A stretch of 64,000 bases of DNA from IMGVR_UViG_3300018080_000098:285794-349793; one strand, 5' to 3'. Positions 19,798-33,366 are shown, counted from the stretch's first letter. Notes: generated by a model from the letters alone, not told the origin. Numbers and translations: made by a program.

Positions 19798-20292
19798 TCA
19801 AGAAAATTGTGGTGAGGTTGCACGAGTAATGAGCCAAAGAAGCATATACACTTCCTCGCTTCTATCGAGTTCCACGGAGAATTGTTTCTTGTTGTCAGCG
19901 TACGCACCGAAAACGCGCTCATCCGGAAAACCCTCGAAGTATACACCATGAATGGATTCTTCCGCATATTTCCCGAAAAGATCGTGAAAATCCACGTCGA
20001 TTTCCACTGGTGAGTCAACCGACACTTTGTAGTCGTGAAAATTGTCGCGAATAGTGAAAACGACCCCTCCTGGGGTACGTAGTTCCACGACGGGTAGTCT
20101 AATAGACTTAGAAGTGTGGGTGCTGATTACTATAGGCTTCAGTGTCTTATACACCTTATAATCTGCGCCTGGGGGACAAACTGCCCACGTCAAACGGTGG
20201 AAGAAGTCGAATTGCACGTGTGCAGCTTTCTTCCACACCATTTCATCTGCAGGAACATTCTCCTTGCACCACTCTTCGAGCGTAATGGTCAT
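19798..20292 (-). CDS. Hypothetical phage protein
   Basis: Start moved to ATG 20292 (MTITLEEW); GGAGG RBS supplied by the pentamer tract. Confidence 0.7.
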   Translation of the reverse strand: MTITLEEWCKENVPADEMVWKKAAHVQFDFFHRLTWAVCPPGADYKVYKTLKPIVISTHTSKSIRLPVVELRTPGGVVFTIRDNFHDYKVSVDSPVEIDVDFHDLFGKYAEESIHGVYFEGFPDERVFGAYADNKKQFSVELDRSEEVYMLLWLITRATSPQFS

Positions 20293-21076: not shown

Positions 21077-21286
21077 CTAATCAATGCTTCTACTTCGCTG
21101 CCACGCGAAACAGCCCTCCGCGCCCACGCACCCCAGCCACAACACCCACACCCACCAGGGCAGCACAAACAATGCCAGGTAATCGTTGAACGCTACCGCT
21201 AACGCTACCAGGAAGAGCACCGGTCCCATTCCTAGCACGGCGACAGTAACGGTAAACACCCTAAATATTTTTATCAAGAAGGTCAC
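21077..21286 (-). CDS. Small membrane protein
   Basis: 69 aa, almost entirely hydrophobic. Confidence 0.55.
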   Translation of the reverse strand: MTFLIKIFRVFTVTVAVLGMGPVLFLVALAVAFNDYLALFVLPWWVWVLWLGCVGAEGCFAWQRSRSID

Positions 21287-22067
21287 CTGATGCCCAGAAA
21301 CCTGCGTCCTTCAAGATAGCTTCACACTCCTGCCGATAGCCCTTCTTGAGCTCGATTACGTTCACACCCGGGTGGCGCATCAACCACAAACCGAACACGG
21401 AATTGGTAGCCACAATAAACTGCACTTTCCCAGAGCACCCCTCACGCTGCACCCACTGCCACAACGGGAGTTTGGTAGGCCAGTCCAGAACAGCGTCAGG
21501 CTCGTCGAGAAGAACTGTTGGAGGCCCCTTTTCAATAACAGGCTCGAGCAGCTCTTGCGCCATCTTGATTCTGTGCGCCCATACGTCGTTCACGTTGTTC
21601 GGGGTAATTCTCCAATTGATGCTTTCTTCCTGCGAGCGCTGTACTAGACGCATAAAGCGTCCTGCAACCTGCTGCCCTGCAGATCCCTTGTCGGTTGCAT
21701 TTATGACACCCTCCATCCCAAAATCCCAATCGAATCCACCTCCCACTAGCCCCACTTGTACAGAAGGGTCAAAGTACATCACAGACTTTCCATCAGACTT
21801 GATGGACATGTTCTTCCTGGGGGTATTTCGGAAACCGAACCCAAAGAGCTCATCAATTGACTGCTGGGTAACTGTAGAAGTTCCTCCCTGTTCGCAGTGC
21901 GTGATCCGCGCCAGCGCTTTTATTACCGTGGACTTCCCCGACCCATTCGGGCCCCAGAGCACGTTGACACACGGCTCAAAGTTGAACGTACGCCGTTTAG
22001 GGAACGGTTTCGACCACCACGTAATGGGTGGCTTGTCTCGATTTATTACCTTCAGCTGCTCGATCAT
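21261..22067 (-). CDS. ABC/SMC-like ATPase (AAA_21-like)
   Basis: Walker A GPNGSGKS, degenerate signature SAGQQ, Walker B LLDEPD. Confidence 0.8.
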   Translation of the reverse strand: MIEQLKVINRDKPPITWWSKPFPKRRTFNFEPCVNVLWGPNGSGKSTVIKALARITHCEQGGTSTVTQQSIDELFGFGFRNTPRKNMSIKSDGKSVMYFDPSVQVGLVGGGFDWDFGMEGVINATDKGSAGQQVAGRFMRLVQRSQEESINWRITPNNVNDVWAHRIKMAQELLEPVIEKGPPTVLLDEPDAVLDWPTKLPLWQWVQREGCSGKVQFIVATNSVFGLWLMRHPGVNVIELKKGYRQECEAILKDAGFWASGDLLDKNI

Positions 22068-22876
22068 CAGTCCACCGCACAGTAGTATCCAGGCATCGGA
22101 CGCTGCAGGTTGCCCTTTTTAAGCTGACGCTGCAGGTACTTCGAGATGGCGTTGTTGGTGGGAATCGCTTTGCGGGGAACGCTCTTGTTTGCCTCCAAAA
22201 GCGCTCGCAAGTCCGTCACCGCGAGCATCTCGTACTCCGCTAGCAGCTTGTCCGCTGGGTCCATCCAAGCTGTCCGAGGCTTACCACCACGGACATTTTT
22301 CTTCCGCTTGGACGCGTTCTTACCGTTGCCCTTCTTCGCCCTAGCAACAGCTTTCTTCTCTACCTTTTTGTTCATGAACGGAGACTTGGCTCCATCCCGC
22401 CATCGGTAAGCGCCCTTCGCTACTTTGACAAGCTTCTTCTCCTTGGCAAGCTTGTCGATGTAGTACCACACCAACCCGTAAGTGATGTCATTGTACATGG
22501 GCGACAGCTCCATGGTCAGATAGGTGACAATGTCCACTACCGAGTGCGCTTTTTTGGTACTGAAGAACTTGCGCGCAATGGCTTTCTTCGCGTCCTTAAA
22601 AGAATGCTCAGGAGGAGATTGAGGACGTTTGACCGCTGCCTTCATCTTTTCTACCCGTTGCTTCCCCTCCTCGAGCTCCTCCATGTCTTTCAGCTTTTCC
22701 AGTGCTTGTGTTACTGCAGTGTACACGCCACCTGTTTTTACAAGCTCGCGCTGAGCCTGCTCAAGTATGCGCTTCTGCTCCACCATCAGTTTCTGGAGCT
22801 CCTCACTCTGCTTGATGAGGAGAGCCCTCGTGTGGACGATCGCTTCCGGTTCTGCTGCCTTCTTTTTTCGAGACAT
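22067..22876 (-). CDS. Coiled-coil protein with two winged-helix-like DNA-binding segments
   Basis: N-terminal coiled coil; LAKEKKLVKVAKGAYRW and LKKGNLQRPMPGYY resemble wHTH wings. Confidence 0.6.
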   Translation of the reverse strand: MSRKKKAAEPEAIVHTRALLIKQSEELQKLMVEQKRILEQAQRELVKTGGVYTAVTQALEKLKDMEELEEGKQRVEKMKAAVKRPQSPPEHSFKDAKKAIARKFFSTKKAHSVVDIVTYLTMELSPMYNDITYGLVWYYIDKLAKEKKLVKVAKGAYRWRDGAKSPFMNKKVEKKAVARAKKGNGKNASKRKKNVRGGKPRTAWMDPADKLLAEYEMLAVTDLRALLEANKSVPRKAIPTNNAISKYLQRQLKKGNLQRPMPGYYCAVD

Positions 22877-23011: not shown

Positions 23012-24169
23012 CTACCGTTTCGCTACACGTTCCGTCTTTTCCCATACACGCCACCGAAGATGAACGCCGTCCACCATCTCCATCCGAGCCCAGTGTACCC
23101 GCTTTTTCGGACCTTCCTTCCAACCGGTGACCCACTCCTTCTCCGCTTTCTTGATCCACGTCGGCAGCGTCGGAGACATCGGACCCGTTTCTCCCTTCAG
23201 CCACACCAGGCACTGGTCTGCCGGGATGTGCTTCTGCACAGCCGTCGTCCAGAAGGAATACTCGGTGCAGCGAGTCAAGAAACGAAGCTGCTCGATGAAA
23301 CCGGTGAGACGGCTCTTCAACGACCGCGCAGCCTTGAAGTCCTCCTGCGTAGCCTCGTAAGGCGTGTACTCTCCCTCGAGCTCCACACCGTCCACTTTCG
23401 CCTCGAAGGCCCACACCTTGATAGCCTCGTCCTCACCTACCTTCTCACTCTTCGGCCACTCCGGCGGCTTAATGTCGAGCTCCTCCCGCAACCGCTTCAC
23501 CTCCGCGCGCAAAAATCGAAGCTCGTCCTCCAACCGCGAAATAGCAGCCTTCGCCACCAGATAGTACACCCCGTAGAAAGAAGGCCACCGCATCGGGTGT
23601 ACCAGGTACTGGAACCGCAACTCGTTCGCCGCACCGCTCAGCTTCTCGAACACGTCGTTCGGCAAGCCCGTCGGCATGATGTCCACCGATTCCCAACCCT
23701 TGTACCACTTCCCCGTCACGTCCTGCAGCAGCATCGCCCGGTAAGCTCCCACCTCAGCATCCGTCGTCCCGTCTTCCTTGGTTTTCGCTTGGATAACATT
23801 CATATCCTCAATACGAATACCGAATGAGAATGCTGCTTTGTTGGAGGTGAGCCCACTCAAACGACCGTGCCGGTTCTCCTTCGACGTGACCCACTCACCC
23901 TCACGTTTCGTGGACGCGCGGCGCGATTGGTACTTTGGCAGATTCACTACCACCCGGTTCTCTACCAGCGGCGTGAGAAAAGCTGCCAGGTCCAGGTCGG
24001 TTACCGGAACACCATCCGGGTCTACCCAGGCTACTCCGGGCTTCCGCTTGTCGAGGTTGTACCCCCACGCATCCAGTAGCCGTTTGCAGAGGACGCGCAT
24101 GTCCTCCTGTCTGTTCTTGACGATGTCCAGGTCCCGAGCGTCGATTGTTTTTCTTTCTGACGTTACCAT
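23012..24169 (-). CDS. Hypothetical phage protein
   Basis: Start moved to ATG 24169 (MVTSERK; AGGAG RBS); the ORF-track extension runs through pentamer tracts. Confidence 0.75.
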   Translation of the reverse strand: MVTSERKTIDARDLDIVKNRQEDMRVLCKRLLDAWGYNLDKRKPGVAWVDPDGVPVTDLDLAAFLTPLVENRVVVNLPKYQSRRASTKREGEWVTSKENRHGRLSGLTSNKAAFSFGIRIEDMNVIQAKTKEDGTTDAEVGAYRAMLLQDVTGKWYKGWESVDIMPTGLPNDVFEKLSGAANELRFQYLVHPMRWPSFYGVYYLVAKAAISRLEDELRFLRAEVKRLREELDIKPPEWPKSEKVGEDEAIKVWAFEAKVDGVELEGEYTPYEATQEDFKAARSLKSRLTGFIEQLRFLTRCTEYSFWTTAVQKHIPADQCLVWLKGETGPMSPTLPTWIKKAEKEWVTGWKEGPKKRVHWARMEMVDGVHLRWRVWEKTERVAKR

Positions 24170-24189
24170 GTTCTCTGTCTCCTGTTGAC

Positions 24190-24249
24190 TATCCTTGCAA
24201 TGCCTTAGTGGGCATAGGCTCGCTTTGCCACTCCCAGCCTGAGCACACT
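24190..24249 (-). repeat. (N)GY-NN pentamer tract T3
   Basis: AGTgt GCTca GGCtg GGAgt GGCaa AGCga GCCta TGCcc ACTaa GGCat TGCaa GGAta. Confidence 0.7.
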
Positions 24250-24272
24250 TCGTATTACTATCTTTACAAGAT

Positions 24273-24377
24273 GAACCTTGGACTACGATACGCTGCCACG
24301 CATTAGACGCCATCGCAATATATTGCGCTACGATGCCTTGCACTACTTGGCGTCACCACACTCTGCAACACTCAACC
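24273..24377 (-). repeat. (N)GY-NN pentamer tract T4 (21 units, possibly two fused tracts)
   Basis: GGTtg AGTgt TGCag AGTgt GGTga CGCca AGTag TGCaa GGCat CGTag CGCaa TATat TGCga TGGcg TCTaa TGCgt GGCag CGTat CGTag TCCaa GGTtc. Confidence 0.8.
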
Positions 24378-24383
24378 AAGAAA

Positions 24384-24770
24384 CTACTCTTCTTCAATGC
24401 GCTCCGGCAAAGCGTACGTGTGCTGCGCCCAGATGTAAGGCTTCAGCAAACTGGCTACTCGTATGTACTCAGGATTTTCCTGCGCCCACTTTTTAGCTCG
24501 TTTGGTTGCCTGCTCGAAAATGCTTTGCGCTTGCCTGTATGTAAAAGTGAGTAGGACTTCGTCGTCACCATCGTGATCGATTGCTTTTTGTGCTTCCTCC
24601 AGAACAATTAAGCAATCCAGGCAGATAGGTGAAACCAGATACGCACCACTGAACTTGGTGGTACTTTCGTTGAAACGTCTGTCACATTGGGAACAAGTCA
24701 GACCGTTCACTGAAGGGAACCGTTGCTCTCGTGGGACCTCTTCCTTCCGTTCGTAGCTCCATTTGTACAT
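24384..24770 (-). CDS. Hypothetical protein with Zn-finger-like CxxC pairs
   Basis: CSQC...CLDC; RBS supplied by tract T5. Confidence 0.65.
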   Translation of the reverse strand: MYKWSYERKEEVPREQRFPSVNGLTCSQCDRRFNESTTKFSGAYLVSPICLDCLIVLEEAQKAIDHDGDDEVLLTFTYRQAQSIFEQATKRAKKWAQENPEYIRVASLLKPYIWAQHTYALPERIEEE

Positions 24771-24775
24771 AACAA

Positions 24776-24855
24776 ACTCCTTGCAGCGCTTTACTCCACT
24801 TCACACTAGCTAGCCACACACCGCCGAGCTCCACAGTACTTCGCCGGGCGACGCC
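24776..24855 (-). repeat. (N)GY-NN pentamer tract T5
   Basis: GGCgt CGCcc GGCga AGTac TGTgg AGCtc GGCgg TGTgt GGCta GCTag TGTga AGTgg AGTaa AGCgc TGCaa GGAgt. Confidence 0.85.
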
Positions 24856-24858
24856 AGG

Positions 24859-25146
24859 TCAGTCTTTCGACAACTCCAACGGAACACACGTGTCCACACA
24901 CTGCTCAAAGCACTTCTTGTGCTTCTGCAGCACCTTTTCTTTGTAGCGATCTTTCAGTACGGATTCGGTAGGGAGGTCGAAATAGTAAAGCGCACTGATC
25001 ACGACAGCCGAGCACAGGATTTCGAGGAAAATAACACGCCAGCCTATCCCGCCCTTCTCGCTGAACCAGTTGTTCAGCAGAGCTGAAAGCACGATTACGC
25101 CCATGCAGATACTGACACCCATCACGATGATTTCGTTGTGCGTCAA
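24859..25146 (-). CDS. Small two-TM membrane protein
   Basis: TTG start after GGAG; two hydrophobic helices. Confidence 0.6.
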   Translation of the reverse strand: MTHNEIIVMGVSICMGVIVLSALLNNWFSEKGGIGWRVIFLEILCSAVVISALYYFDLPTESVLKDRYKEKVLQKHKKCFEQCVDTCVPLELSKD

Positions 25147-25152
25147 AACAGA

Positions 25153-25221
25153 CTCCTTGCCTCACCGGTCCACGCTCCACCGAAGCTTGCCCCACGCAGC
25201 CCCGCCACTCCGGGCGATGCC
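25153..25221 (-). repeat. (N)GY-NN pentamer tract T6
   Basis: GGCat CGCcc GGAgt GGCgg GGCtg CGTgg GGCaa GCTtc GGTgg AGCgt GGAcc GGTga GGCaa GGAg. Confidence 0.8.
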
Positions 25222-25232
25222 TGGTGCGTTTA

Positions 25233-25302
25233 TTTCCTTGCCAAACCATACGTGACCATACCATTCCGCGGGTTGCGGTTCCGAGACGAGCGGCGCCACT
25301 CC
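25233..25302 (-). repeat. (N)GY-NN pentamer tract T7
   Basis: GGAgt GGCgc CGCtc GTCtc GGAac CGCaa CCCgc GGAat GGTat GGTca CGTat GGTtt GGCaa GGAaa. Confidence 0.75.
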
Positions 25303-25306
25303 GGGC

Positions 25307-25864
25307 CTAGTGATTGCTGATCCGCTTGTGGGGAAGGTTCTGGAAAACGTTTCCGTGCTCGAGTGTTGTGGACACGTCACCATCGTTGTCACTGTACGCG
25401 AACCGAAGGATAACCTTTCCTTCATTCTCCTCCAAAAATTTTCGCGCAGCTTCTTCTTGATTTGCATAGATTTCTTTTTCTTCTTCCTCGCGCGCTTTGT
25501 CCCTTTCGGGACCTTTTTCTTTGTACTTCTCCCAATAGTGCTTTCTGTACTGCCTACTGGTGTAGCACCCTGGTATTCCGGGGATCTCCTTTTCGATGTA
25601 GAACATGTCCCAGTACACGAGGTTGTGCAGATCGTCCGCGATGGTCTCGAGAGAGTAGGGAAGCTTGTGCAGCTGCGCTTGTATGTCATTCCACACGACT
25701 TGCGCGAGTGTTTTCGTGGGGACTGGGTCACCGTAAACATCCAGCTCTTGTGTGTCTCCAAACAGAAGCTCCTGCAGGGCGTCAGCACTTTCAGGGATCT
25801 CGTCGAACGCCACAATGAAAGAGGAGCTCGAGCTGTTACTCACGAATCCGTTACGAATTTTCAT
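25307..25864 (-). CDS. MKIRxGFVSNSSSSSF-motif protein 1
   Basis: Start moved to ATG 25864 (AGGAGG RBS); begins MKIRNGFVSNSSSSSF. Confidence 0.8.
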   Translation of the reverse strand: MKIRNGFVSNSSSSSFIVAFDEIPESADALQELLFGDTQELDVYGDPVPTKTLAQVVWNDIQAQLHKLPYSLETIADDLHNLVYWDMFYIEKEIPGIPGCYTSRQYRKHYWEKYKEKGPERDKAREEEEKEIYANQEEAARKFLEENEGKVILRFAYSDNDGDVSTTLEHGNVFQNLPHKRISNH

Positions 25865-26216
25865 TTTGGTCCTCCTTCTTTTTCGGCACCCAAAAGATTC
25901 CCACCCGCTCATACTCCACCCCTTCAGCTTCCTCTTTCGCGCGTTTCTCTGCACGCTTCTGTGCTCGTTTCGCAGCTTCTGCTTTAAGCTTTGCCGTTGT
26001 CTCTTGCGTGGCTTCCATCATACGCGCTGTAGCGTCTGTGAGTTTCTCTTCGTCGAGCGACATGAGGATGATCTGAATAATCTCGTCACGGCCTAGAACC
26101 TCTTCATTCGCTAAAGGTTCACAGCACCTAGGGCATCCGTAGGCCGCACCTGCATCTTTCGCTCTCTTTTTGAGCTCCTCGTCAGCGAACGCTTCGATAA
26201 GCTCAGGCCGCGTCAT
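25851..26216 (-). CDS. Hypothetical protein with CxxC and coiled coil
   Basis: Start moved to ATG 26216 (MTRPEL). Confidence 0.6.
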   Translation of the reverse strand: MTRPELIEAFADEELKKRAKDAGAAYGCPRCCEPLANEEVLGRDEIIQIILMSLDEEKLTDATARMMEATQETTAKLKAEAAKRAQKRAEKRAKEEAEGVEYERVGIFWVPKKKEDQNENS

Positions 26217-26288
26217 CGCTGGCTGCTCCTTGTTAGAAAGGCAGCGTCCGCACAATTTCAGAGGGAAAAAGTCAAACATAGAAACCTC

Positions 26289-26684
26289 CTAACCCATCCT
26301 CGTTCCCACGAACAGCTTGATGGGAGCTTCCTCTTTCGACAAGCCCAATCTCTCCCGAGCTTCCCCGGCCGACGCCAGCAGTTCTACCACATCGAACTCA
26401 TACTGGTCTGGAGGACTCGTGTCACTCCAACCAGCTACCTCGACACCAACCAAGTCTTTGCCGGGAGGAGCTCCGTTCTCCTCGTGATCACATACTGTGT
26501 ACTTCCCGTTGTGCATCAAGTCGTGGAACTCGTCCTCCCCCTCTTCAATGGAGTTCCAGGTGTGCACGTCGTAGAGGTGCTGTAGGTAATACTGCCACGA
26601 GAACTTCTCACGGGGTACCGTGAAGCCCATGATGACGAAGCTGCTGGTAGAACTGTTGCTTACGAAACCTGTGCGGATTTTCAT
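26289..26684 (-). CDS. MKIRxGFVSNSS-motif protein 2
   Basis: Begins MKIRTGFVSNSSTSSF. Confidence 0.8.
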   Translation of the reverse strand: MKIRTGFVSNSSTSSFVIMGFTVPREKFSWQYYLQHLYDVHTWNSIEEGEDEFHDLMHNGKYTVCDHEENGAPPGKDLVGVEVAGWSDTSPPDQYEFDVVELLASAGEARERLGLSKEEAPIKLFVGTRMG

Positions 26685-26685
26685 C

Positions 26686-27234
26686 TTATGACTCCATGAC
26701 TACCACGAAGGGTAGGTGCTCGAGAAAATCGAAGTTGTTGAACATCTCCTGCTCCACGGGACCACATCCGGAACCGTAGCCCAGCAGGTAGACTTCTTTC
26801 GTGTCGTGGGGAGGGAAGCAGCGCATCGAGGCACCGTAGCTTCTAGCTTTCTCTACCATTAATTCGATGACCGCTTTGCCAAACGCTGCTGGATCCTGCT
26901 CCTCCAGATCGAACAGCTTCTCCTGTTCTTCCTTGGGAACGTTCATGGTTTGGAGTGCGTCCTCCACATCGCGGATATAGTACCGCTCTCGGCACATAAA
27001 CACAAGCCTACTAATAACGTCATCAATCTGACGCTGCTCCTGAATATCCTTCCATAGCTGCTCCGCTAACATGCGTGCAGTGATGGTGTCCTCTTCATCA
27101 TCCCAAGCTCGGGACTCGTAGCCTTCTGGGAAAAAGATTTCCTCCACATCCTCTACCGACTCCGGGCGCGATGGAAGAATGACCACGAAGCTCGAGGAAC
27201 TCGAATTGCTAACGAAACCGGTGCGGATTTTCAT
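26686..27234 (-). CDS. MKIRxGFVSNSS-motif protein 3
   Basis: Begins MKIRTGFVSNSSSSSF. Confidence 0.8.
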   Translation of the reverse strand: MKIRTGFVSNSSSSSFVVILPSRPESVEDVEEIFFPEGYESRAWDDEEDTITARMLAEQLWKDIQEQRQIDDVISRLVFMCRERYYIRDVEDALQTMNVPKEEQEKLFDLEEQDPAAFGKAVIELMVEKARSYGASMRCFPPHDTKEVYLLGYGSGCGPVEQEMFNNFDFLEHLPFVVVMES

Positions 27235-27551
27235 AGCTCACCCCACTCGTGCCAGGTGGCGTAGTTGTCGTCGACTTCCACGTGGTCCAGCGATACGCCG
27301 ATCGCTTCCAGGAAAGCTTCCATGTCGATGTTGTCCATGATGGTGCTACCCTCGACTGTAGTGTCCGTTTCGTGGATCGCCCACTCATCACTGTCCCGAG
27401 GTTTGTAGCGCTGCCCGTATTTCGCGGGGTCTTTTTTGATTTTGTGCAGGTGGCTCTTGATGAGCTTGATTTGGGCAGGGCTTATCCACTCCTTCTGAAT
27501 TACGAAGGATGAGCTCGAGCTATTGCTCACGAAGCCTACTCGGACTTTCAT
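27231..27551 (-). CDS. MKIRxGFVSNSS-motif protein 4
   Basis: Begins MKVRVGFVSNSSSSSF. Confidence 0.8.
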   Translation of the reverse strand: MKVRVGFVSNSSSSSFVIQKEWISPAQIKLIKSHLHKIKKDPAKYGQRYKPRDSDEWAIHETDTTVEGSTIMDNIDMEAFLEAIGVSLDHVEVDDNYATWHEWGEL

Positions 27552-27560
27552 CGTCTGCTC

Positions 27561-27914
27561 CTACCAATACATCTGTAACCCTGCCGCCTCGTCACCAGCG
27601 GCCAGTATTTTCTTTTTGACTTCTTCCCAAGCGTCGTAAATTTTGTCGTGCAAGTCGTCGTCGAATGCGCACTCGTCGGGGAAGTCTGCATGATCCATCG
27701 CCATCTCTACCCACGACATTCCACCATCACCGTAAGTGGCGAACGCCATGAAAGTACGCCCAAGAAGTTTGATGTTCCCCTGCTCAAAGAAGTCCGCGAT
27801 AGCATCCTCCAACGGAGTTAGCGTCGGCTTTACCTTCTCCCATGTTTCCGTTGTTGCAAGCAACAGGAAGCTTGCAGAGCTCGAGTTGCTAACGAAACCT
27901 GTGCGGATTTTCAT
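27561..27914 (-). CDS. MKIRxGFVSNSS-motif protein 5
   Basis: Start moved to ATG 27914; begins MKIRTGFVSNSSSASF. Confidence 0.8.
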   Translation of the reverse strand: MKIRTGFVSNSSSASFLLLATTETWEKVKPTLTPLEDAIADFFEQGNIKLLGRTFMAFATYGDGGMSWVEMAMDHADFPDECAFDDDLHDKIYDAWEEVKKKILAAGDEAAGLQMYW

Positions 27915-27928
27915 GCCCGTCTCCTTTA

Positions 27929-28279
27929 CTACCAATCGTCTCCGTTGGTAGTCACCAGGTCTGGATTCTCCATCAGCTTATGCGCCGTGTCCGACCACGC
28001 TCTGTGGACGTCCGTACCGAAACGTTCAGAAGGAGGGCCATCGTAGTTATGCGTATCCTCTTCCTCCATCCACGTGGACCAACTCGTAGAGTGGCTACTC
28101 CACGTAGAGAAGGACACGATGTCGATACCGCAGAAGTTGTCCTTTTGCATGATGGCTTCCGCTACCGCGATTTGAAAAGGTTCGAGCCCTCTTTTCACCT
28201 TCTCCCAGTTCTCCGCTGTCGTCGTGAGAACGAAAGAGGAAGAGCTCGAGTTGCTAACGAAACCAGTGCGAATTTTCAT
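27929..28279 (-). CDS. MKIRxGFVSNSS-motif protein 6
   Basis: Begins MKIRTGFVSNSSSSSF. Confidence 0.8.
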   Translation of the reverse strand: MKIRTGFVSNSSSSSFVLTTTAENWEKVKRGLEPFQIAVAEAIMQKDNFCGIDIVSFSTWSSHSTSWSTWMEEEDTHNYDGPPSERFGTDVHRAWSDTAHKLMENPDLVTTNGDDW

Positions 28280-28357
28280 AATACTTTCCTCCTACGTCCA
28301 TTCCCGGTGGGTGAGCACCGAACCATTCAGATACGTGAGCGATTGGTGTACGTTCTC

Positions 28358-29152
28358 CTAAAACTCAAAGGTGGCCCCTTTCCCTACGAAGCCCCAAAAG
28401 CCTGCTTCTACAGCTTTTTCTTGCCACTCTTCCCATTCTTTAATGATGTTGTCATGATAATGAACGAGCCTCATTTTTCCCTTCGTATCCGAATTGAGCT
28501 CACAGAGCTCCTCAAAGTGGGCGTGTACCCCCGATTTAAAGGGAAGTGTTTCTACATCATGAAAAATGATTGCTGCTTCGTTGTAGAAGTCGCGGATCTG
28601 GTTGGGCGCATGCTGGGTATCTGTCGTCAGAAAAACTTTTTCATCTGTGGAAGCTCTGAACATGAGTCCGAAAGATGGCTCAAATGTGAACGCATTCACA
28701 AAATGGATCATTTGTATGAGGCGGAAGTTTGGGCAGCTGGCTTCGGAGGGGATCACGAAAGATTGGTTGCGCTCGATAACATGGACATCGAAGTACGTAT
28801 CGAGCGTGGCGCGTTTCACTTGGAGGGAAGCGAGTCCAGCACTCAGACCGCGTTCCCATAGGGCGTCCACCATGAACTCAGAGATGAACATGTCGGGACG
28901 CCCTTTGTACCGGGGGTCGAAGTAGGAGGAAAACGCCAAGTATTCCAGGCCACCGATGTGGTCCGCATGCAGATGCGAAATGTACACTCCGTTGATGTCT
29001 AGGTAACTAAGTCCTTGAGCTGCGAGGGAGAAACGTATGTCACCACCGCAGTCGATGAGGAGCTTGTAGCCACGGTCGAATTCGATGAGTGCGTTCGTCT
29101 GGAAGTTTTCCAGAGTAAAAGCGTTGCCGGTTCCGAGCCAGGTAATTTTCAT
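28358..29152 (-). CDS. MBL-fold metallo-hydrolase, Apyc1-like cyclic-nucleotide phosphodiesterase
   Basis: GTGNAF, LLIDCG, HLHADHIGGLE (HxHxDH), TTDT, FHD...GVHA, HYHDN; start moved to ATG 29152. Confidence 0.8.
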   Translation of the reverse strand: MKITWLGTGNAFTLENFQTNALIEFDRGYKLLIDCGGDIRFSLAAQGLSYLDINGVYISHLHADHIGGLEYLAFSSYFDPRYKGRPDMFISEFMVDALWERGLSAGLASLQVKRATLDTYFDVHVIERNQSFVIPSEASCPNFRLIQMIHFVNAFTFEPSFGLMFRASTDEKVFLTTDTQHAPNQIRDFYNEAAIIFHDVETLPFKSGVHAHFEELCELNSDTKGKMRLVHYHDNIIKEWEEWQEKAVEAGFWGFVGKGATFEF

Positions 29153-29472
29153 GGTACACTCCATGTTCTTTTGGGTTCGTCTGTAGGAACCTCGAACGGT
29201 GAAAAACCGTACTCTTCTTCAAACACGTACCATACCATCCCGAAGGTCCAGGTACGAAAAATGCTGTCCCGCATACGCTTGCAAGACATACACGTCTTCG
29301 CTTCAAACCACGACCCATCGCAGCAACCCTTTACGTGCTCGTAGTGCTCACCGGGACAAATGAGCTCCCAACACTCTCCGCAGCGGTGCTTTTTGCGCGC
29401 CTTGCGGATGGTGATTGTACACGGGTCGACAGGTTCCGCGTCGTAACCACCGTCTATGCAGCTCTCGTACAC
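29149..29472 (-). CDS. Cys-rich phage protein
   Basis: RKARKKHRCGEC...CMSC. Confidence 0.65.
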   Translation of the reverse strand: MYESCIDGGYDAEPVDPCTITIRKARKKHRCGECWELICPGEHYEHVKGCCDGSWFEAKTCMSCKRMRDSIFRTWTFGMVWYVFEEEYGFSPFEVPTDEPKRTWSVP

Positions 29473-29484
29473 AGGAAGAATTCC

Positions 29485-30894
29485 TCAGAACTTGATTTGG
29501 ATAGTCCCAAATGGGTCCGTGTCGCTACCGAAGATGGTGCTAGTACCATCTCGGAAGAAGTCTTTCCTATGAAGGTAAGCGTACCCTCCGCTAACCCTCT
29601 CGATTTTCACCCATTTGCTGTTTGCAAACTCCAGTTTCAGCTTCGTTTTTCCATCGGGCGCGAGTACCCAGTAGCTCCCCTCACTCACCCGAGAGATGTC
29701 GAGGACGGTGATAAACATTTCGTGGTCGGTCGCGTGGGTGTAAAAACGGAACCGGTCCAGCGGACCGTTCACGAACCCCTTTCCGATGAACAATTGCAGC
29801 CTCTCTTTCAGAGTGTCTACAAAAGTGGTCAGCTCCTTCAAGGAGCCGTCGGGGTTAGGCTGCAAATGGTGCCACATCCATTCACGGAGCTGGGTACGCA
29901 CTTCATCGTCCCATTCCATTTTGGAAAGAGAGTGTGGGCTGGAGGTGATGTGACGCTGAGCGATACGTTTGATGCTACCAGGAACTGTTACTTCTTCCTC
30001 TTCCTTTTCAGAGTAGACTTCGTCCCACGTTTTTTGAAGGGTAGTGGGGAAGTCCGCCTTGGTTGGCGCCACGTTAGCAGGAGGGGATGCTGTGTCAAAT
30101 CCAGCTTCCTTTCTTCTTGAATATGGCCAGAGATGCTCCGGGATCCCGAAAGCTGTCAATTTCGCTTGTGTAAGCTCACCGTATTCATCTGCGTAGCTCC
30201 AAATCTTTGTTGGGGGCCCCGAAGTTGTTGTAGGTGTCCACAAGTGCCCACACGATGCGTTCTCAGCGTCGCAGATGGCACACGTACCCTTCTCCACAAG
30301 AGCTCCCATCGAGTGGCCTTTGCTGGGCGTTTTTTCTGGCTCCTGTCGCTCGTAGAAGAAACCTTGGTACTTCAGTGACTTCGGCGGCTTGAGCTCCTTG
30401 GGCTCGTTGGTACCCCTGATTGCCACCCTTTCCATCATGTGGGCGTGATCTTGTTCACCCGCTGCGATAAAGGTATTCTTGATCGTCTCCCACTTCATCT
30501 CCACAGGCTCGTCGAAAATAAACTTTATCTTCGGTCGCTCCAGCAAATCCACCACGAGCTGCGCGGGCAGCCGCATTTTCTCGAAGCCCTCTTCTTGACA
30601 AAGAGCAAACTCGCGCTGTACCTGCAAGAGGTCCCATGCTTTTTTGTTCCACCATCTCCCGCGCCTCAACACCTCCTCAACCAAGGATAAGGGAAGCACT
30701 ATACTTCCGTCTTTCGTAGTCCGGTCGTGACGGTACTTTTTCTGAACGTGCGTATGCCAAGTTACTACCTGCTTAGCCCGAACCAGTAGGTCCTGAAGCT
30801 CCTCCGTCAACTTTCCGGGCCAGACGGACTTGTCTCGCGCTTTGATGGAAAACTTGAAGCTGGGAAATTCGTCGTTGTTTTTGTTCGCTGGCAT
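29485..30894 (-). CDS. Hypothetical protein
   Basis: 469-aa ORF, GAGGAG RBS, internal CAIC...C..H. Confidence 0.7.
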   Translation of the reverse strand: MPANKNNDEFPSFKFSIKARDKSVWPGKLTEELQDLLVRAKQVVTWHTHVQKKYRHDRTTKDGSIVLPLSLVEEVLRRGRWWNKKAWDLLQVQREFALCQEEGFEKMRLPAQLVVDLLERPKIKFIFDEPVEMKWETIKNTFIAAGEQDHAHMMERVAIRGTNEPKELKPPKSLKYQGFFYERQEPEKTPSKGHSMGALVEKGTCAICDAENASCGHLWTPTTTSGPPTKIWSYADEYGELTQAKLTAFGIPEHLWPYSRRKEAGFDTASPPANVAPTKADFPTTLQKTWDEVYSEKEEEEVTVPGSIKRIAQRHITSSPHSLSKMEWDDEVRTQLREWMWHHLQPNPDGSLKELTTFVDTLKERLQLFIGKGFVNGPLDRFRFYTHATDHEMFITVLDISRVSEGSYWVLAPDGKTKLKLEFANSKWVKIERVSGGYAYLHRKDFFRDGTSTIFGSDTDPFGTIQIKF

Positions 30895-30904
30895 TAGCTT
30901 CTCC

Positions 30905-32026
30905 TCAATAAATGTCGAACTCCGGACACTGCCGACAACCCGACACCAAACACTTCTTACCCTTCGCCGTTGCCAGGAGCTCCTCGCGCCACTTCACCGT
31001 CCGCGGATGATACCACACGTCCCGCAGAAAGTCCTCTGCCTCGATCACGTCGATACCCTCGAAGCCGCTTTCTTCGAGGAAAGAACAGGGAAACATACGA
31101 CCTCTTACATCCACGTAAACCGAGAACAGCGTGGACTCGCAGGGCTCTGCCAACATCTCGTACTGTTCGTAGTTTTCCGAATCCTCCACCGACTTGAGAA
31201 ATAGGGGTGCGGAGCAGCTGTCGAAGCCGATGCCAACACCCTTGTCCATGGCTGTCTGCACGAGCTTCTGGTACTTAGCAGCGCTTCGGAGTGGTGTAAA
31301 GGACTTACCACGCCCAGCGGGTTTGAGGGCGAGGAAGACGATGGCCCTGAGCCCCTTCAGACGCGGGTCGTTCTTGGCGTCCTCGAGGAGCTCGAAGCAA
31401 GAGTCGTACGTTTCCTCGCAGAGCAGCTGGTGAATGTTGACCTGCTCGAGACCAGCTTTCGACAGTTGCTCTACGGCGTCGTAGCACACGTCCTTCGGGT
31501 CGTACCGGGACACCGCGACCGCGCCACACAGGTTCGCCAGCGCAGCGTACTTGTCGTCGTCCATCCGCGCGCCGTTGATGGTCACGTTTGGGATGACGCC
31601 GTTTTCTCGGCAGTGGCTGAAGATGGCCCACAGGTCGGGGTTGGCGTCGATGGAGCCGATGCCAAAGGCGATCTGAGTTAGTGGTTTTGGGAGTTTCTCG
31701 AAGACCTTTTTGAAGGTTTCGAGGGACATGTTTTCCCCAGTTGGGCGGTTGGACTTGTAGCAGAATTTGCACGGGGTCCCAGTGATGCCGTCACAGACAG
31801 TGGACAGCTCGATATCTGCGAGCTCGGGGCCCCAGGGTGCCATTTCCGGGTCATCCTTTTTGGTGGCCCCCCACCGAGCGAAGAAACCATCGTCCTTCCG
31901 AAAAATGTAGTTGTAGTTTTCGGACGCGAGGGCTTTCAGGTGTGAAGACTCTTGGATTCTACAAGTGGGAATGCTTTCTAGGAAGGCCAAGCGGTTTTCA
32001 AACGTGGGGTCTGATTTTGTGGTCAT
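30905..32026 (-). CDS. Radical SAM enzyme with SPASM/twitch-like C-terminus
   Basis: CX7CX2C motif (CDGITGTPCKFC), PNVTING, C-terminal CES...FPCSF...CLVSGCRQC. Confidence 0.85.
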   Translation of the reverse strand: MTTKSDPTFENRLAFLESIPTCRIQESSHLKALASENYNYIFRKDDGFFARWGATKKDDPEMAPWGPELADIELSTVCDGITGTPCKFCYKSNRPTGENMSLETFKKVFEKLPKPLTQIAFGIGSIDANPDLWAIFSHCRENGVIPNVTINGARMDDDKYAALANLCGAVAVSRYDPKDVCYDAVEQLSKAGLEQVNIHQLLCEETYDSCFELLEDAKNDPRLKGLRAIVFLALKPAGRGKSFTPLRSAAKYQKLVQTAMDKGVGIGFDSCSAPLFLKSVEDSENYEQYEMLAEPCESTLFSVYVDVRGRMFPCSFLEESGFEGIDVIEAEDFLRDVWYHPRTVKWREELLATAKGKKCLVSGCRQCPEFDIY

Positions 32027-32049
32027 AGTAATGTTGCTCCTCGTAATAA

Positions 32050-32114
32050 TTGCCTTGCATTACCAAACAGTGCCTAGCCCAACTCGACGTGAGCACGCCG
32101 TACTGAGCGCGGCA
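32050..32114 (-). repeat. (N)GY-NN pentamer tract T8
   Basis: TGCcg CGCtc AGTac GGCgt GCTca CGTcg AGTtg GGCta GGCac TGTtt GGTaa TGCaa GGCaa. Confidence 0.85.
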
Positions 32115-32122
32115 GAGTATTT

Positions 32123-32151
32123 AAGCTACCAGCTCTATTTTACTGCGTCAA
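32123..32151 (-). promoter_or_regulatory. sigma70-type promoter driving tract T8 and the radical SAM operon
   Basis: TTGACG-N17-TAGCTT; tract begins 8 nt downstream of the -10 box. Confidence 0.65.
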
Positions 32152-32159
32152 GAAAATAA

Positions 32160-32783
32160 TCAGCCATCCAGCTGCGGAATCAGGAAGCTCACGAAGCACA
32201 CGCCGACGAGAACAGTACCGAATTTGTCGTCCACGACGAGGTCTTTGATGTGGTACTGCTGGTTGGCCATGAAATAGTGCTTGTTGCCTACGATGTGGCT
32301 AGACTGACTAGCCGGTCCGTAGCGACGCTCGAACAGACCGTTCATCGACTGGGTGAGCATCTTCCGAGCCTTCTCCGTAGAGCCACACCCTTCGTACTCA
32401 CAGGCGAAGCCGCCCACAAGTTCGTCAGAACGCTCTTCAGCAGGAAATGTCTTGTACACATCAAACGTGGCCACCCCCGCACAGAGGTGCTGCCCTTCTT
32501 CGCCGTTCATCTGGGCCATAATGCACTCGAGCACCATCCCGTGGTGCATGAGGCCCTGCTCCTGTGCGTCCTGGAGGGTGATCTGCTCCGCTTCCTTCGG
32601 AATCACACTCGTGTATTTTACGATGTTGCAGTTCTCGATGCCACCCTCGAGCAACGCGATGTCGTAGTCGGTCGTCTCCCACGGATCCGACCCGGGGCCG
32701 AAGTTGCTCTGCCCGGCGCCCGCGACGACGATGTATTTCTCGGGAATGCAGCTGGCTGTTCGGATCAGCTTGTGCTCACTCAT
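32160..32783 (-). CDS. pdaD: Pyruvoyl-dependent arginine decarboxylase
   Basis: ALLEGGIENCNIVKYTSVIP with Thr-Ser self-cleavage site as in chlamydial AaxB; G..LECIMA and GFACEY motifs. Confidence 0.8.
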   Translation of the reverse strand: MSEHKLIRTASCIPEKYIVVAGAGQSNFGPGSDPWETTDYDIALLEGGIENCNIVKYTSVIPKEAEQITLQDAQEQGLMHHGMVLECIMAQMNGEEGQHLCAGVATFDVYKTFPAEERSDELVGGFACEYEGCGSTEKARKMLTQSMNGLFERRYGPASQSSHIVGNKHYFMANQQYHIKDLVVDDKFGTVLVGVCFVSFLIPQLDG

Positions 32784-33366
32784 TCTCGTCTCCTATAATT
32801 CTCGGATTCCCGACAGCGTAGCCATGCTTGTCGTACTCCGTGGGCCAACGTTGCAGCGCGAGTATCTGAACTCGCTTCTCATTGGTAATTTTGAGAGCGT
32901 GCTGCTCATCTCTGGCTAGCACACCATTCAATACCATGAACTCTGTGCTGTTTAAGCGCTCCTCTACTTCCTTGCTTTCACCGTTGGCCCAAAAGCGTTT
33001 GTGCGAGGACTTCCAACCTTTGGAGTCGGGGACGGGCGGACCGTAAAAGGAAACTTTATTTCTGGCTTTGAGAGCGTCTGCGAGTGATTTGCGACGGACC
33101 GCGGAAGTCTCACCATCCTTCGACATAAAGACATAGAAGCCGTACTTATCTTTTGGCACCTCCGGGAAGGCTGCGTCAACTTCCCAAGTTTCGACACGGT
33201 AATCCGGAGTGTACCGGTAGCTACCATCCTCGTTACAAACGTTTTCACCGTCTTCCTTTTCGGTGTTGTGGAGTTTGCAGAACTCGTGTGCTTTTTCTTT
33301 GGTGGAGAACATGGCGGCGATTCCGTAGTCAGAATACTCACCACATGTTACTACATATACTTCCAT
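32776..33366 (-). CDS. Hypothetical phage protein
   Basis: MEVYVVTCGEYSDYGIAAMFSTKEKA; follows tract T9. Confidence 0.7.
   Translation of the reverse strand: MEVYVVTCGEYSDYGIAAMFSTKEKAHEFCKLHNTEKEDGENVCNEDGSYRYTPDYRVETWEVDAAFPEVPKDKYGFYVFMSKDGETSAVRRKSLADALKARNKVSFYGPPVPDSKGWKSSHKRFWANGESKEVEERLNSTEFMVLNGVLARDEQHALKITNEKRVQILALQRWPTEYDKHGYAVGNPRIIGDENE

What the first reader, a model, noticed from the sequence alone, without database searches (positions are those of the whole stretch)
25307..28279. Six proteins sharing an MK[IV]RxGFVSNSSSSSF leader in an operon with a radical SAM enzyme
Seen: six genes start with a near-identical 16-aa Ser-rich N-terminus (also conserved at DNA level) and then diverge completely; five are consecutive. 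They sit downstream, in the same direction, of a SPASM-like radical SAM enzyme, with an MBL hydrolase in between; a pyruvoyl decarboxylase lies just upstream of the radical SAM gene. Established: RiPP-type systems use a conserved leader to recruit radical SAM maturases. Inference: a phage post-translational modification system with multiple substrates, or a shared assembly strand for a hetero-oligomer. The conserved DNA leader could also promote domain shuffling.
Basis: partly seen in the sequence, partly recalled or inferred. Interest (0 to 1): 0.65.

Follow-up and report, generated by a model that had tools for sequence, protein, structure and literature searches.

The report
Phage radical SAM enzyme with tagged proteins
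A jumbo phage carries six different small proteins that all begin with the same 16-residue serine-rich tag, and across hundreds of phages such tagged genes sit beside one particular radical SAM enzyme, which points to an undescribed protein-modification system with many substrates.

Summary
Six minus-strand genes (25307-28279) start at residue 1 with MK[IV]RxGFVSNSS[ST][SA]SF. These are the only six copies in the complete 349.8-kb phage genome.

The tag is conserved as protein, not as DNA. About half of the codon pairs that encode the same residue are synonymous variants, and Ser switches between the AGY and TCN codon boxes.

Starting from tagged genes, the radical SAM (rSAM) family of 30905-32026 (phrog_7293) is the only conserved neighbour. 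Starting from the rSAM, 72 of 80 viral loci hold 1-13 tagged genes within 10 kb, all on the rSAM strand. Most apparent exceptions have the partner elsewhere on the contig; the rest, bar one weak match, are fragments. No third gene is conserved. The MBL (an Apyc1 homologue), the arginine decarboxylase and the other window genes are local additions.

After the tag, the protein bodies fall into many families that are unrelated at profile level and match no Pfam family. A tag profile finds 25,570 protein clusters in 1.84 billion representatives.

The rSAM model is closest to the peptide- and protein-modifying enzymes SuiB, SkfB, CteB and anSME.

Best reading: one rSAM enzyme binds and modifies a shared N-terminal tag on a variable set of phage proteins. 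The chemistry and the biological role are untested. RB43-like coliphages carry a minimal version. I found no description in the searchable literature.

The parts
30905..32026 (-). Radical SAM enzyme (373 aa) with a twitch/SPASM-like C-terminal domain. It is the conserved partner of the tagged genes. The cluster motif here is CX7CX2C; most relatives have CX3CX2C. It is followed by the invariant YKxN. Further conserved Cys residues are C271, C296, C314 and C367, and C296-x12-G309-x4-C314 fits the SPASM/twitch half-motif.
   Evidence: PF04055 31.5 bits (cut-off 29.5); SPASM 17.6 bits, below its cut-off of 21.5. phrog_7293 E 6e-100. Alignment A3. AF2 model pLDDT 92.4. Foldseek top hits are SuiB, SkfB, TigE, CteB and anSME.
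27929..28279 (-). Tagged protein L1 (116 aa); the tag is encoded at 28232-28279.
   Evidence: GGAG lies upstream. Only viral hypothetical clusters resemble it.
27561..27914 (-). Tagged protein L2 (117 aa counted from the ATG at 27914); 39% identical to L1; the tag is encoded at 27867-27914.
27231..27551 (-). Tagged protein L3 (106 aa); the tag is encoded at 27504-27551. Its body family recurs in 33 of 111 dereplicated locus groups.
26686..27234 (-). Tagged protein L4 (182 aa); the tag is encoded at 27187-27234. It is a divergent relative of the L6 body that lacks the L6 family's conserved C-terminal D/E-H/H residues.
26289..26684 (-). Tagged protein L5 (131 aa); the tag is encoded at 26637-26684.
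25307..25864 (-). Tagged protein L6 (185 aa counted from the ATG at 25864); the tag is encoded at 25817-25864. It is a full-length member of phrog_7397. The body has a confidently predicted fold with no solved relative.
   Evidence: phrog_7397 E 2.5e-19. 156 unnamed homologues. AF2 pLDDT 94.2, with residues 1-10 averaging 51. No PDB match.
25851..26279 (-). Untagged 142-aa gene lying between L5 and L6. It is not conserved in other loci and is probably an insertion into the array.
28358..29164 (-). MBL-fold hydrolase of the Apyc1 (anti-Pycsar) family. It sits in the same gene string but is not a conserved partner of the system.
   Evidence: PF23023 80.6 bits, cut-off 50. Absent from the co-occurring clusters.
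29149..30894 (-). Two window-specific genes between the rSAM and the MBL: a 469-aa protein (29485-30894) and a 107-aa Cys-rich protein (29149-29472). Neither matches any family, and neither is conserved beside the system elsewhere.

Best explanation
This is a two-component phage system. One component is a radical SAM enzyme with a twitch/SPASM-type auxiliary cluster domain. The other is a variable set of small proteins, six here and 1-15 elsewhere, that share only an invariant N-terminal tag, M-K-[IVT]-R-x-G-F-V-S-N-S-S-S-S-S-F, followed by two hydrophobic residues.

Proposed mechanism, all of it inferred:
1. The free N-terminal tail of each newly made tagged protein is captured by the enzyme. 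This probably happens by strand addition to the enzyme's conserved beta-rich N-terminal domain.
2. The Ser-rich stretch is threaded into the rSAM barrel.
3. The 5'-deoxyadenosyl radical abstracts a hydrogen atom from a residue inside the tag.

Because the only sequence shared by all substrates is the tag, the tag is most likely both the recognition element and the site of modification, as in sulfatase maturation. It is less likely to be a RiPP-style leader that guides chemistry on a downstream core.

My rough ranking of candidate chemistries, none tested: an intramolecular C-C or ether crosslink within the tag (Phe7 or Phe16 with Ser or Asn); oxidation of a Ser; epimerisation.

The diverse bodies would then be phage effector proteins, encoded in early or accessory regions, that all need the same chemical handle or cap.

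What is shown: the tag, its protein-level conservation, the near-obligate genomic pairing with this one enzyme family, and the enzyme's structural kinship with peptide and protein modifiers. What is not shown: binding, any modification, and the function of the bodies.
For: (1) The tag is at residue 1 in 328 of 329 distinct tagged proteins from 77 loci. K2 and R4, which were not part of the search pattern, are conserved in more than 99%. Conservation stops after residue 18.
(2) Selection acts on the protein. 52% of same-residue codon pairs among the six window copies are synonymous variants, and Ser alternates between AGY and TCN codons.
(3) After removal of residues 1-18, 13 body families show no profile-profile similarity (all hhalign probabilities below 25%). 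None matches Pfam above its cut-off; the only hits are three weak sub-threshold ones.
(4) Co-occurrence. From the tag side, the rSAM lies within 10 kb on the same strand in 41 of 59 dereplicated groups. From the rSAM side, 72 of 80 loci carry tagged genes, all on the rSAM strand. In the union, the rSAM is present in 95 of 111 groups and tags in 104. The next most frequent neighbour, IMPDH/GMP reductase, appears in only 11.
(5) Of ten tag loci with no rSAM nearby, six have it elsewhere on the contig and the other four are 3-21% complete fragments. Five rSAM loci without a nearby tag were searched over the whole record: two have clear tag genes elsewhere, one gives only a weak 10-residue match, and two (27% and 2% complete) have none.
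(6) In RB43-like and Slopekvirus coliphages the rSAM and two tagged genes are about 20 kb apart on one strand.
(7) The rSAM model's best PDB matches are SuiB with its bound precursor (E 9e-12, TMq 0.69), SkfB, TigE, CteB, anSME, PqqE, EpeE and ChlB.
(8) In the L6 model the first 10 residues are of low confidence and residues 1-12 are unstructured, while the rest is above 90 pLDDT. That fits a free tail available to an enzyme.
Against: - No direct evidence exists of binding or modification. The single complex prediction (rSAM + 4Fe-4S + SAM + L6) scored 0.52, 0.28 and 0.13, which the tool itself calls no verdict.
- The second half of the tag (residues 13-20) is predicted to be the first core beta-strand of the L6 fold, so part of the conservation could be structural.
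- Full invariance of sixteen residues is more than known rSAM substrates need.
- No protease or other accessory gene is conserved, so nothing indicates what happens after a modification.
- Gene neighbourhood shows functional linkage, not an enzyme-substrate relation.
Confidence: 0.6

Rival explanations
1. Adaptor model. The tag is a docking peptide that attaches each body to the rSAM enzyme. The bodies bind different host molecules and present them to the enzyme, so the enzyme modifies the targets and not the tag. This would resemble F-box or other substrate-receptor families.
For: It explains the same co-occurrence data. The variable, fast-turning-over repertoire of bodies (182 BLAST clusters among 669 tagged proteins) looks like a set of target binders.
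Against: A docking peptide would not need five or six individually invariant serines maintained across both Ser codon boxes. No solved SPASM/twitch relative that I know of uses exchangeable receptor subunits. The closest structures bind their peptide substrate directly.
Confidence: 0.15
2. Assembly-strand model. The tag is a polar, aromatic-flanked beta segment through which tagged proteins pair or stack with one another, forming hetero-oligomers or zipper-like assemblies. The rSAM is functionally linked but does not touch the tag.
For: Residues 13-20 are a beta-strand in the L6 model and residues 1-12 are unstructured in the monomer. Several tagged proteins are always encoded together.
Against: It gives no reason for the near-obligate pairing with one rSAM family, or for that enzyme's kinship with peptide modifiers. 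RB43-like phages keep only two tagged proteins yet retain the rSAM. The number and kinds of bodies vary freely, which is unexpected for a defined complex.
Confidence: 0.1
3. Sorting-signal model. The tag directs proteins to a place or a fate, such as packaging into the capsid (as with the T4 capsid-targeting sequence of internal proteins), export, or timed proteolysis. Its adjacency to the rSAM merely reflects a shared accessory region.
For: A strictly N-terminal shared sequence on otherwise unrelated proteins, in a hyperplastic early region of T4-like phages, recalls the T4 internal-protein locus. That parallel comes from my own knowledge.
Against: Co-occurrence with the rSAM holds across very different phages, and also when the genes are 20 kb apart. 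The tag has no hydrophobic signal-peptide core and no Leu/Ile-x-Glu prohead-protease site (read directly). No packaging or protease gene is conserved beside it.
Confidence: 0.05
4. DNA-level model. The conserved 48 nt act as a recombination or gene-conversion cassette that shuffles bodies, and protein-level conservation is secondary.
For: Arrays are tandem and co-directional. The free tag positions 3 and 5 are more alike within a locus than between loci (0.47 against 0.35, and 0.28 against 0.15).
Against: Synonymous sites are half-saturated, and nucleotide identity is only 56-88% between the window copies. Position 19, outside the tag, also shows a small within-locus excess, so amino-acid composition may explain the concerted signal.
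Confidence: 0.03

Closest known systems
rSAM-SPASM/twitch RiPP maturases (SuiB/StrB, SkfB, CteB, PqqE)
   Same: Best structural matches of the enzyme model. Shared features are the rSAM barrel with a C-terminal auxiliary-cluster domain, and an enzyme gene placed next to genes whose products share a conserved N-terminal sequence.
   Different: The substrates here are 72-279-aa proteins with unrelated bodies that match no known family (only the L6 body has been modelled), not short peptides. The conserved element is at residue 1 and is probably itself the modified site. No conserved protease, transporter or PqqD-type recognition domain is detected. Sequence similarity to any characterised maturase is marginal.
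Anaerobic sulfatase-maturing enzymes (AtsB/anSME) acting on sulfatases
   Same: An rSAM with a SPASM-type domain that modifies whole proteins at a short motif near the N-terminus. AtsB abstracts the C-beta hydrogen of a serine (PMC10114670). anSME is among the structural matches.
   Different: The tag lacks the (C/S)-x-(P/A)-x-R sulfatase motif. Only one auxiliary cluster site is conserved here, against two in anSME. There is one enzyme for many unrelated substrates, and the system is phage-encoded.
One-enzyme, many-precursor RiPP systems such as the prochlorosins (ProcM with about 30 ProcA peptides); cited from my own knowledge
   Same: A single modifying enzyme serves a large set of gene products that combine a highly conserved N-terminal part with hypervariable remainders.
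   Different: Different enzyme class (a lanthionine synthetase). In those systems the leader is removed and the chemistry is on the variable core, and the products are peptides.
T4 internal proteins with a capsid-targeting sequence in a hyperplastic locus; cited from my own knowledge
   Same: Unrelated phage proteins encoded in tandem share a short N-terminal sequence. The locus is highly variable between related phages.
   Different: That sequence is a packaging signal cleaved by the prohead protease. No rSAM is involved, and the tag here has no such cleavage motif.
Glycyl-radical enzymes and their rSAM activases
   Same: An rSAM acts on a short motif centred on an invariant Gly followed by an aromatic residue. 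Compare R-x-G-F in the tag with the fingerprint R-V-x-G-[FYW].
   Different: The spacing differs by one residue. The motif is N-terminal rather than inside a C-terminal glycyl-radical domain. No Gly_radical Pfam match was found. Activases are not of the SPASM/twitch type, and the small, diverse bodies could not shield a radical.

Membership tests
Radical SAM superfamily (PF04055) | Cys triad CX3CX2C that binds the SAM-cleaving 4Fe-4S cluster | tested here: met
   Most of the 35 aligned homologues have CX3CX2C. The window copy has an insertion that gives CX7CX2C, and other members have still longer inserts. The last two Cys and the following YKxN are invariant or nearly so.
Radical SAM superfamily (PF04055) | Profile match above the curated cut-off, and a partial TIM-barrel fold | tested here: met
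   31.5 bits against a cut-off of 29.5. 27 of 35 homologues match. The AF2 model aligns to many solved rSAM enzymes at Foldseek probability 1.00.
SPASM/twitch subfamily | C-terminal CX9-15GX4C hairpin motif that ligates an auxiliary cluster | tested here: met
   C296-x12-G309-x4-C314 in the window protein. C296 and C314 are invariant and G309 nearly so.
SPASM/twitch subfamily | Full seven-Cys SPASM signature (second half CX2CX5CX3C plus a distal Cys) for two auxiliary clusters | tested here: not met
   Beyond the hairpin, only C271 and C367 are invariant, with a CxxC in about half of the members. Pfam SPASM scores 17.6 bits, below its cut-off of 21.5, for the window copy; 22 of 35 members match at E <= 0.01. 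This fits a one-cluster, twitch-like domain better.
RiPP biosynthetic system | Short precursor peptide with a leader that is removed and a core that is modified | tested here: not met
   Tagged products are 72-279 aa, median 145. No protease is conserved in the neighbourhood. Whether the tag is removed cannot be told from sequence.
RiPP biosynthetic system | Modifying enzyme encoded beside its precursor genes and dependent on a conserved N-terminal sequence | tested here: inconclusive
   Adjacency and co-occurrence are met. Dependence on the tag is untested. No PqqD/RRE Pfam match was found, but a conserved beta-rich N-terminal domain exists.
anSME-sulfatase pair | Substrate motif (C/S)-x-(P/A)-x-R | tested here: not met
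   The motif is absent from the tag consensus and from the six window proteins' first 30 residues.
Glycyl-radical enzyme and activase | R-V-x-G-[FYW] fingerprint within a C-terminal glycyl-radical domain (PF01228) | tested here: not met
   The tag has R-x-G-F at residues 4-7, which is the wrong spacing and position. No Pfam match for any tagged protein.
PHROG families 7293 (enzyme) and 7397 (L6 body) | Full-length profile match | tested here: met
   phrog_7293 E 5.8e-100 over residues 19-371. phrog_7397 E 2.5e-19 over residues 1-185 of L6. The other five match only the first 18-36 positions. Both families are annotated 'unknown function'.
Apyc1 anti-Pycsar phosphodiesterases (MBL gene 28358-29164) | Pfam PF23023 match above the gathering score | tested here: met
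   80.6 bits against a cut-off of 50, covering residues 5-240. Cyclic-nucleotide hydrolysis itself was not tested.
T4-type capsid-targeting sequence | N-terminal sequence ending in a prohead-protease site (Leu/Ile-x-Glu) | tested here: not met
   No such site in or just after the tag consensus. The definition comes from my own knowledge.

The most novel reading that the evidence does not exclude
Phages possess a general, previously unnoticed protein-tagging chemistry. A dedicated radical SAM enzyme converts an invariant 16-residue N-terminal tag into a common modified structure, such as a crosslinked cap or a reactive group. It does so on tens of thousands of otherwise unrelated small effector protein families, and this modification is required for their action in host takeover or counter-defence. 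That would be a protein-scale counterpart of RiPP biosynthesis, with a minimal version in E. coli phage RB43.
Probability: 0.45. Interest if true: 0.9.

Novelty: new variant of a known kind. Interest (0 to 1): 0.8.

Why it matters
If the rSAM does modify the tag, four things follow.
- It would give a first functional handle on a very large block of phage 'dark matter': 25,570 clusters at 50% identity carry the tag, and none has a Pfam family or a name.
- It would add a new substrate class, whole proteins recognised by an N-terminal tag, and possibly new chemistry on a Ser-rich sequence, to the SPASM/twitch radical SAM enzymes.
- It would offer a portable 16-residue tag and enzyme pair of possible use in protein engineering.
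- The variable arrays sit in accessory or early regions, here next to an Apyc1 homologue. They may therefore be a reservoir of host-takeover or anti-defence proteins.

The system is directly testable, because RB43, RB16, Lw1, KP15 and Matisse-type phages of E. coli and Klebsiella carry one enzyme and two tagged proteins.

Tried and rejected
- **Complex prediction**: rSAM + 4Fe-4S + SAM + L6 gave ipSAE 0.52, 0.28 and 0.13. The median is under the mark and the controls were not run. The tool's verdict is 'no answer', so this counts neither for nor against binding.
- **Fold searches with the L6 model**: PDB by Foldseek (best E 1.2), VIA-align wide (best Z 4.9, helical fragments only), BFVD (one unnamed 170-aa viral protein at E 8e-3) and ESM Atlas (only viral 'hypothetical protein' clusters, TM 0.73-0.77). 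No functional lead.
- **PDB sequence profiles**: the L6 family gave nothing. The rSAM profile gave spurious hits to designed PPR repeats, then weak SkfB and BtrN hits.
- **Family scans**: Pfam, NCBIfam and PADLOC scans of tagged proteins, of representatives of ten body families, and of ten longer (246-278 aa) homologues found no family above threshold. A language-model search for L1 found only viral hypotheticals.
- **A third conserved gene**: none found. Apparent extra clusters were antisense shadow ORFs of the rSAM. The others (IMPDH/GMP reductase, TnpB, homing-endonuclease-like, DNA ligase, CCA-adding enzyme, AAA/VWA) occur in 11 or fewer of 111 groups.
- **Concerted evolution of tag positions 3 and 5 within a locus**: significant against shuffles, but position 19, outside the tag, is also raised. 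I treat this as inconclusive.
- **Promoter and terminator scan of 24000-33500**: one weak promoter-like site and no convincing minus-strand terminator between the rSAM and the array. This is compatible with co-transcription but does not prove it.
- **Literature**: no paper holds the motif strings or the PHROG numbers searched. [quoted passage not shown] A review supplied the background on AtsB/anSME, twitch domains and cyclophane synthases (PMC10114670).
- **Sequencing runs**: three DNA holders (two sediment, one seawater metagenome), only one with the full stretch.
- **First profile scan with the 35-sequence rSAM alignment**: It was repeated with a 12-sequence alignment.
- **Rejected readings**: signal peptide (no hydrophobic core), sulfatase motif, glycyl-radical motif and capsid-targeting sequence. 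See the membership tests.


Full report
**Setting.**
The window is the last 64 kb of a single 349,793-bp record. The collection lists it as a virus genome with direct terminal repeats and a CheckV completeness of 100. Both ends carry a tandem 18-mer. Its DNA is found in full in one sediment metagenome run. The region of interest is a tightly packed string of minus-strand genes.

**The observation.**
- Six minus-strand genes begin at residue 1 with MK[IV]RxGFVSNSS[ST][SA]SF: L1 27929-28279, L2 27561-27914, L3 27231-27551, L4 26686-27234, L5 26289-26684 and L6 25307-25864.
- For L2 and L6 the longest ORF starts further upstream. The ATG that opens the tag is preceded by GGAG at the usual distance, as in the other four.
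- A six-frame scan of the whole genome finds these six and no others.
- L1 to L5 are consecutive. A 142-aa untagged gene lies between L5 and L6.
- Upstream on the same strand lie an MBL-fold gene (28358-29164), a 107-aa Cys-rich ORF, a 469-aa gene with no family, and the radical SAM gene (30905-32026). Above that lies a pyruvoyl-dependent arginine decarboxylase (32160-32783).

**Protein conservation or DNA conservation?**
- Among the six copies, 105 of 201 codon pairs that encode the same residue use different codons.
- Serine positions alternate between the AGY and TCN boxes, which needs two base changes.
- Mean nucleotide identity over the 48 nt is 70%, with a range of 56-88%.
- The tag is therefore held by selection on the peptide. 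It is not kept alike by recent gene conversion or by an RNA or DNA element.

**How far the tag reaches.**
- L6 is a full-length member of phrog_7397 ('unknown function'). The other five match only the first 18-36 positions of that model.
- A word search with L6 found 156 unnamed relatives.
- A scan of IMG/VR with the L6 family alignment returned 77 loci. 69 of them carry two or more tagged genes, up to 15, nearly always in tandem on one strand.
- Over 328 distinct tagged proteins the logo is M K [IVT] R x G F V S N S S S S S F [IV] [VI], followed by no conservation at all.
- The pattern used to find them fixed residues 6-16, so their conservation is partly built in. M1, K2 and R4 were not in the pattern, and K2 and R4 are more than 99% conserved. 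The tag starts at residue 1 in 328 of 329 cases.
- A 32-column profile of tags, searched against 1.84 billion representative proteins, found 25,570 clusters at E <= 0.001. In almost all of the 150 listed, the match is at residues 1-30.
- A few of those sequences contain two tagged modules in one reading frame, the second again beginning with Met-Lys.

**The bodies.**
- With residues 1-18 removed, 13 body families of five or more members show no profile-profile similarity to each other. All 78 hhalign probabilities are below 25%.
- Representatives match no Pfam family above its cut-off (three weak sub-threshold hits only), and the tagged proteins tested matched no NCBIfam or PADLOC family.
- In 158 loci, the 669 tagged proteins fall into 182 BLAST clusters, 110 of them singletons. 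In loci ascertained through the enzyme, no body family is present in more than 19 of 67 groups.
- The L6 body folds with high confidence (pLDDT 94.2) into an alpha/beta structure with no relative in the PDB. Only viral hypothetical clusters resemble it elsewhere.
- In that model, residues 1-10 have a mean pLDDT of 51 and residues 1-12 are unstructured. Residues 13-20 form the first beta-strand. The first dozen residues therefore look like a free tail, and the last part of the tag belongs to the fold.

**The partner.**
I clustered all ORFs of the loci, with the tag masked, and counted clusters by dereplicated locus group.
- Only one untagged family stands out: the radical SAM enzyme of 30905-32026 (phrog_7293, E 6e-100). 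It lies within 10 kb on the same strand in 41 of 59 groups. Many of the misses sit at contig ends.
- In the reverse direction, a scan with the enzyme returned 80 loci. 72 of them carry one to 13 tagged genes within 10 kb, every one on the enzyme's strand.
- In the union of 111 groups, the enzyme is present in 95 and tags in 104. The next most frequent real neighbour, an IMPDH/GMP reductase, appears in 11.
- Among 92 groups with a full-length enzyme, a tagged gene starts within 300 nt of its stop in 29. The median gap to the first downstream tagged gene is 528 nt.
- Of ten tag loci with no enzyme nearby, six have it elsewhere on the contig, including both records that are at least 90% complete. 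The other four are fragments of 3-21% completeness.
- I searched five enzyme loci with no tag nearby over their whole records. Two have clear tagged genes elsewhere, one gives only a weak 10-residue match, and two (27% and 2% complete) have none.
- In 185,579 prokaryote species genomes the enzyme pattern was confirmed at only six places. Most are contigs of metagenome bins, and five of the six have tagged genes beside the enzyme.
- Among 50,697 cultured-phage records, both the enzyme (174 records) and the L6-type protein (113 records) occur in the same narrow set of T4-like phages of Escherichia, Klebsiella, Enterobacter, Cronobacter and Citrobacter.
- In RB43 and in Klebsiella phage Matisse there are two tagged genes and one enzyme gene, about 20 kb apart on one strand, in the early-gene region.
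- The window's MBL, decarboxylase, 469-aa, 107-aa and 142-aa genes do not recur beside the system.

**The enzyme.**
- The alignment of 35 homologues shows the CX3CX2C cluster motif, with insertions of variable length before the second Cys. In the window copy this gives CX7CX2C.
- The motif is followed by an invariant YKxN. There is a conserved N-terminal segment of about 45 residues.
- Four further conserved Cys residues (C271, C296, C314, C367) are present. C296-x12-G-x4-C314 fits the first half of the SPASM/twitch signature, and the second half is absent.
- Pfam Radical_SAM is above its cut-off. SPASM is below its cut-off in the window copy but matches 22 of 35 homologues at E <= 0.01.
- NCBIfam gives only weak hits to peptide-maturase models.
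- The AF2 model (pLDDT 92.4) has a helix and four strands ahead of the barrel.
- Its best PDB matches are SuiB with bound precursor (E 9e-12, TMq 0.69), SkfB, TigE, CteB, GDGT-MAS, anSME, PqqE, EpeE and ChlB. Apart from GDGT-MAS, which acts on lipid, these belong to the peptide- and protein-modifying branch of the superfamily, whose members and chemistries are reviewed in PMC10114670.

**Interpretation.**
Four facts are shown:
- a strictly N-terminal peptide, invariant at nearly every position and kept by protein-level selection;
- bodies that share nothing else;
- one and only one conserved partner gene;
- that partner is a relative of enzymes that act on peptides and proteins.

The simplest account is that the enzyme recognises the tag and acts on it. 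Since nothing else is common to the substrates, I think the tag is both the handle and the site of chemistry, as in sulfatase maturation. I think it less likely to be a leader that guides work on a downstream core.

Which reaction occurs is open. From what this enzyme branch is known to do (PMC10114670), a crosslink within the tag, oxidation of a serine, or epimerisation are the candidates. The F-V-S and S-S-F triplets would fit three-residue cyclophane formation, but that rests on my memory of that literature and was not tested.

The role of the bodies is unknown. Three things suggest accessory host-takeover or counter-defence proteins, but only by inference: their turnover, their position in early or hyperplastic regions of T4-like phages, and the Apyc1 homologue within this window's gene string.

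**Alternatives.**
- An adaptor model, in which the tag docks target-binding bodies onto the enzyme, fits the genomics equally well. It does not explain why each serine is invariant.
- An assembly-strand model fits the predicted strand at residues 13-20 but does not explain the enzyme.
- A sorting signal and a recombination cassette fit the data poorly.

**Known or new?**
- Text searches for the motif strings and the PHROG numbers found no paper that holds them. Broader keyword searches found none that describes the tag or links it to the enzyme.
- Within the searchable library, the link between this enzyme and a tag-defined protein superfamily is therefore undescribed.
- I class it as a new variant of a known kind: an rSAM maturase with co-encoded substrates that share an N-terminal sequence. 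The substrates are whole, diverse proteins, the setting is phage genomes, and the scale is very large.

**Limits.**
- All evidence is genomic and structural prediction.
- The complex prediction gave no verdict.
- Contigs are often fragments, so absence counts are soft.
- The loci were found through the tag or the enzyme, so the co-occurrence figures are conditional on one partner being present. They are not a census.
- The count of 25,570 clusters comes from a short profile whose best possible score is about 60 bits, so some matches near the threshold may be false.

Noticed in passing
window 28358-29164 (-): The MBL-fold protein inside the rSAM-to-array gene string is a member of the Apyc1 anti-Pycsar family (PF23023, 80.6 bits against a cut-off of 50). 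That suggests a cyclic-nucleotide-degrading counter-defence gene. It is not conserved beside the system in other phages.
   Followed up: partly
window 32160-32783 (-): Pyruvoyl-dependent arginine decarboxylase (PF01862, E 4e-24) encoded by the phage directly upstream of the rSAM gene. It has no PHROG match and is not a conserved neighbour of the system.
   Followed up: partly
window 18257-19837 (-): A 526-aa protein with a lipoprotein-like N-terminus, made almost wholly of repeats rich in Cys, Asp and Gly (recurring CGDGVQDTGEECDDGN-type units). Seen in the ORF translation only.
   Followed up: no
G000 contig ends (window end about 63900-64000, and genome start): Both ends of the 349,793-bp genome consist of tandem copies of the 18-mer CCCGAGCATCCCCGTACA. 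This matches the 'direct terminal repeats' label of the record.
   Followed up: partly
window 30905-32026 (-), residues 78-89: The window's rSAM has a four-residue insertion inside the canonical cluster motif (CX7CX2C instead of CX3CX2C). Homologues carry inserts of up to about 17 residues at the same spot, so this loop is a tolerated variable site next to the 4Fe-4S ligands.
   Followed up: partly
P0121-P0129 (metagenomic proteins): Some predicted proteins hold two complete tagged modules in one frame, the second again starting with Met-Lys-x-Arg. These could be fused neighbours after loss of a stop, gene calls under another genetic code, or true tandem fusions.
   Followed up: no
P0132, P0146, P0179; L011:8966: Very short tagged ORFs (20-47 aa) exist among representatives and in loci. 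They may be contig-end fragments, decayed copies, or real peptide-sized substrates.
   Followed up: no
L162 / G014 contig 10 (Flagellimonas marina isolate assembly, 178,077-bp contig): An isolate genome assembly carries the rSAM and two tagged genes about 20 kb apart on a 178-kb contig. The layout resembles that of RB43-like phages. It may be a co-assembled phage or a prophage.
   Followed up: no
window 21261-22067 (-) and 22067-22876 (-): A 268-aa P-loop ATPase, whose Walker A region matches many defence-system ATPase models only locally, and a 269-aa Lys-rich protein with weak AbiEi-like hits lie downstream of the array on the same strand.
   Followed up: no
window 1-13500 and 39004-40680: Eight large ORFs of the window (375-606 aa) have no PHROG match at E <= 0.001. 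Pfam terminase (PF03237) and HK97 capsid (PF05065) models find nothing in the whole genome. This jumbo phage is very distant from described ones.
   Followed up: partly
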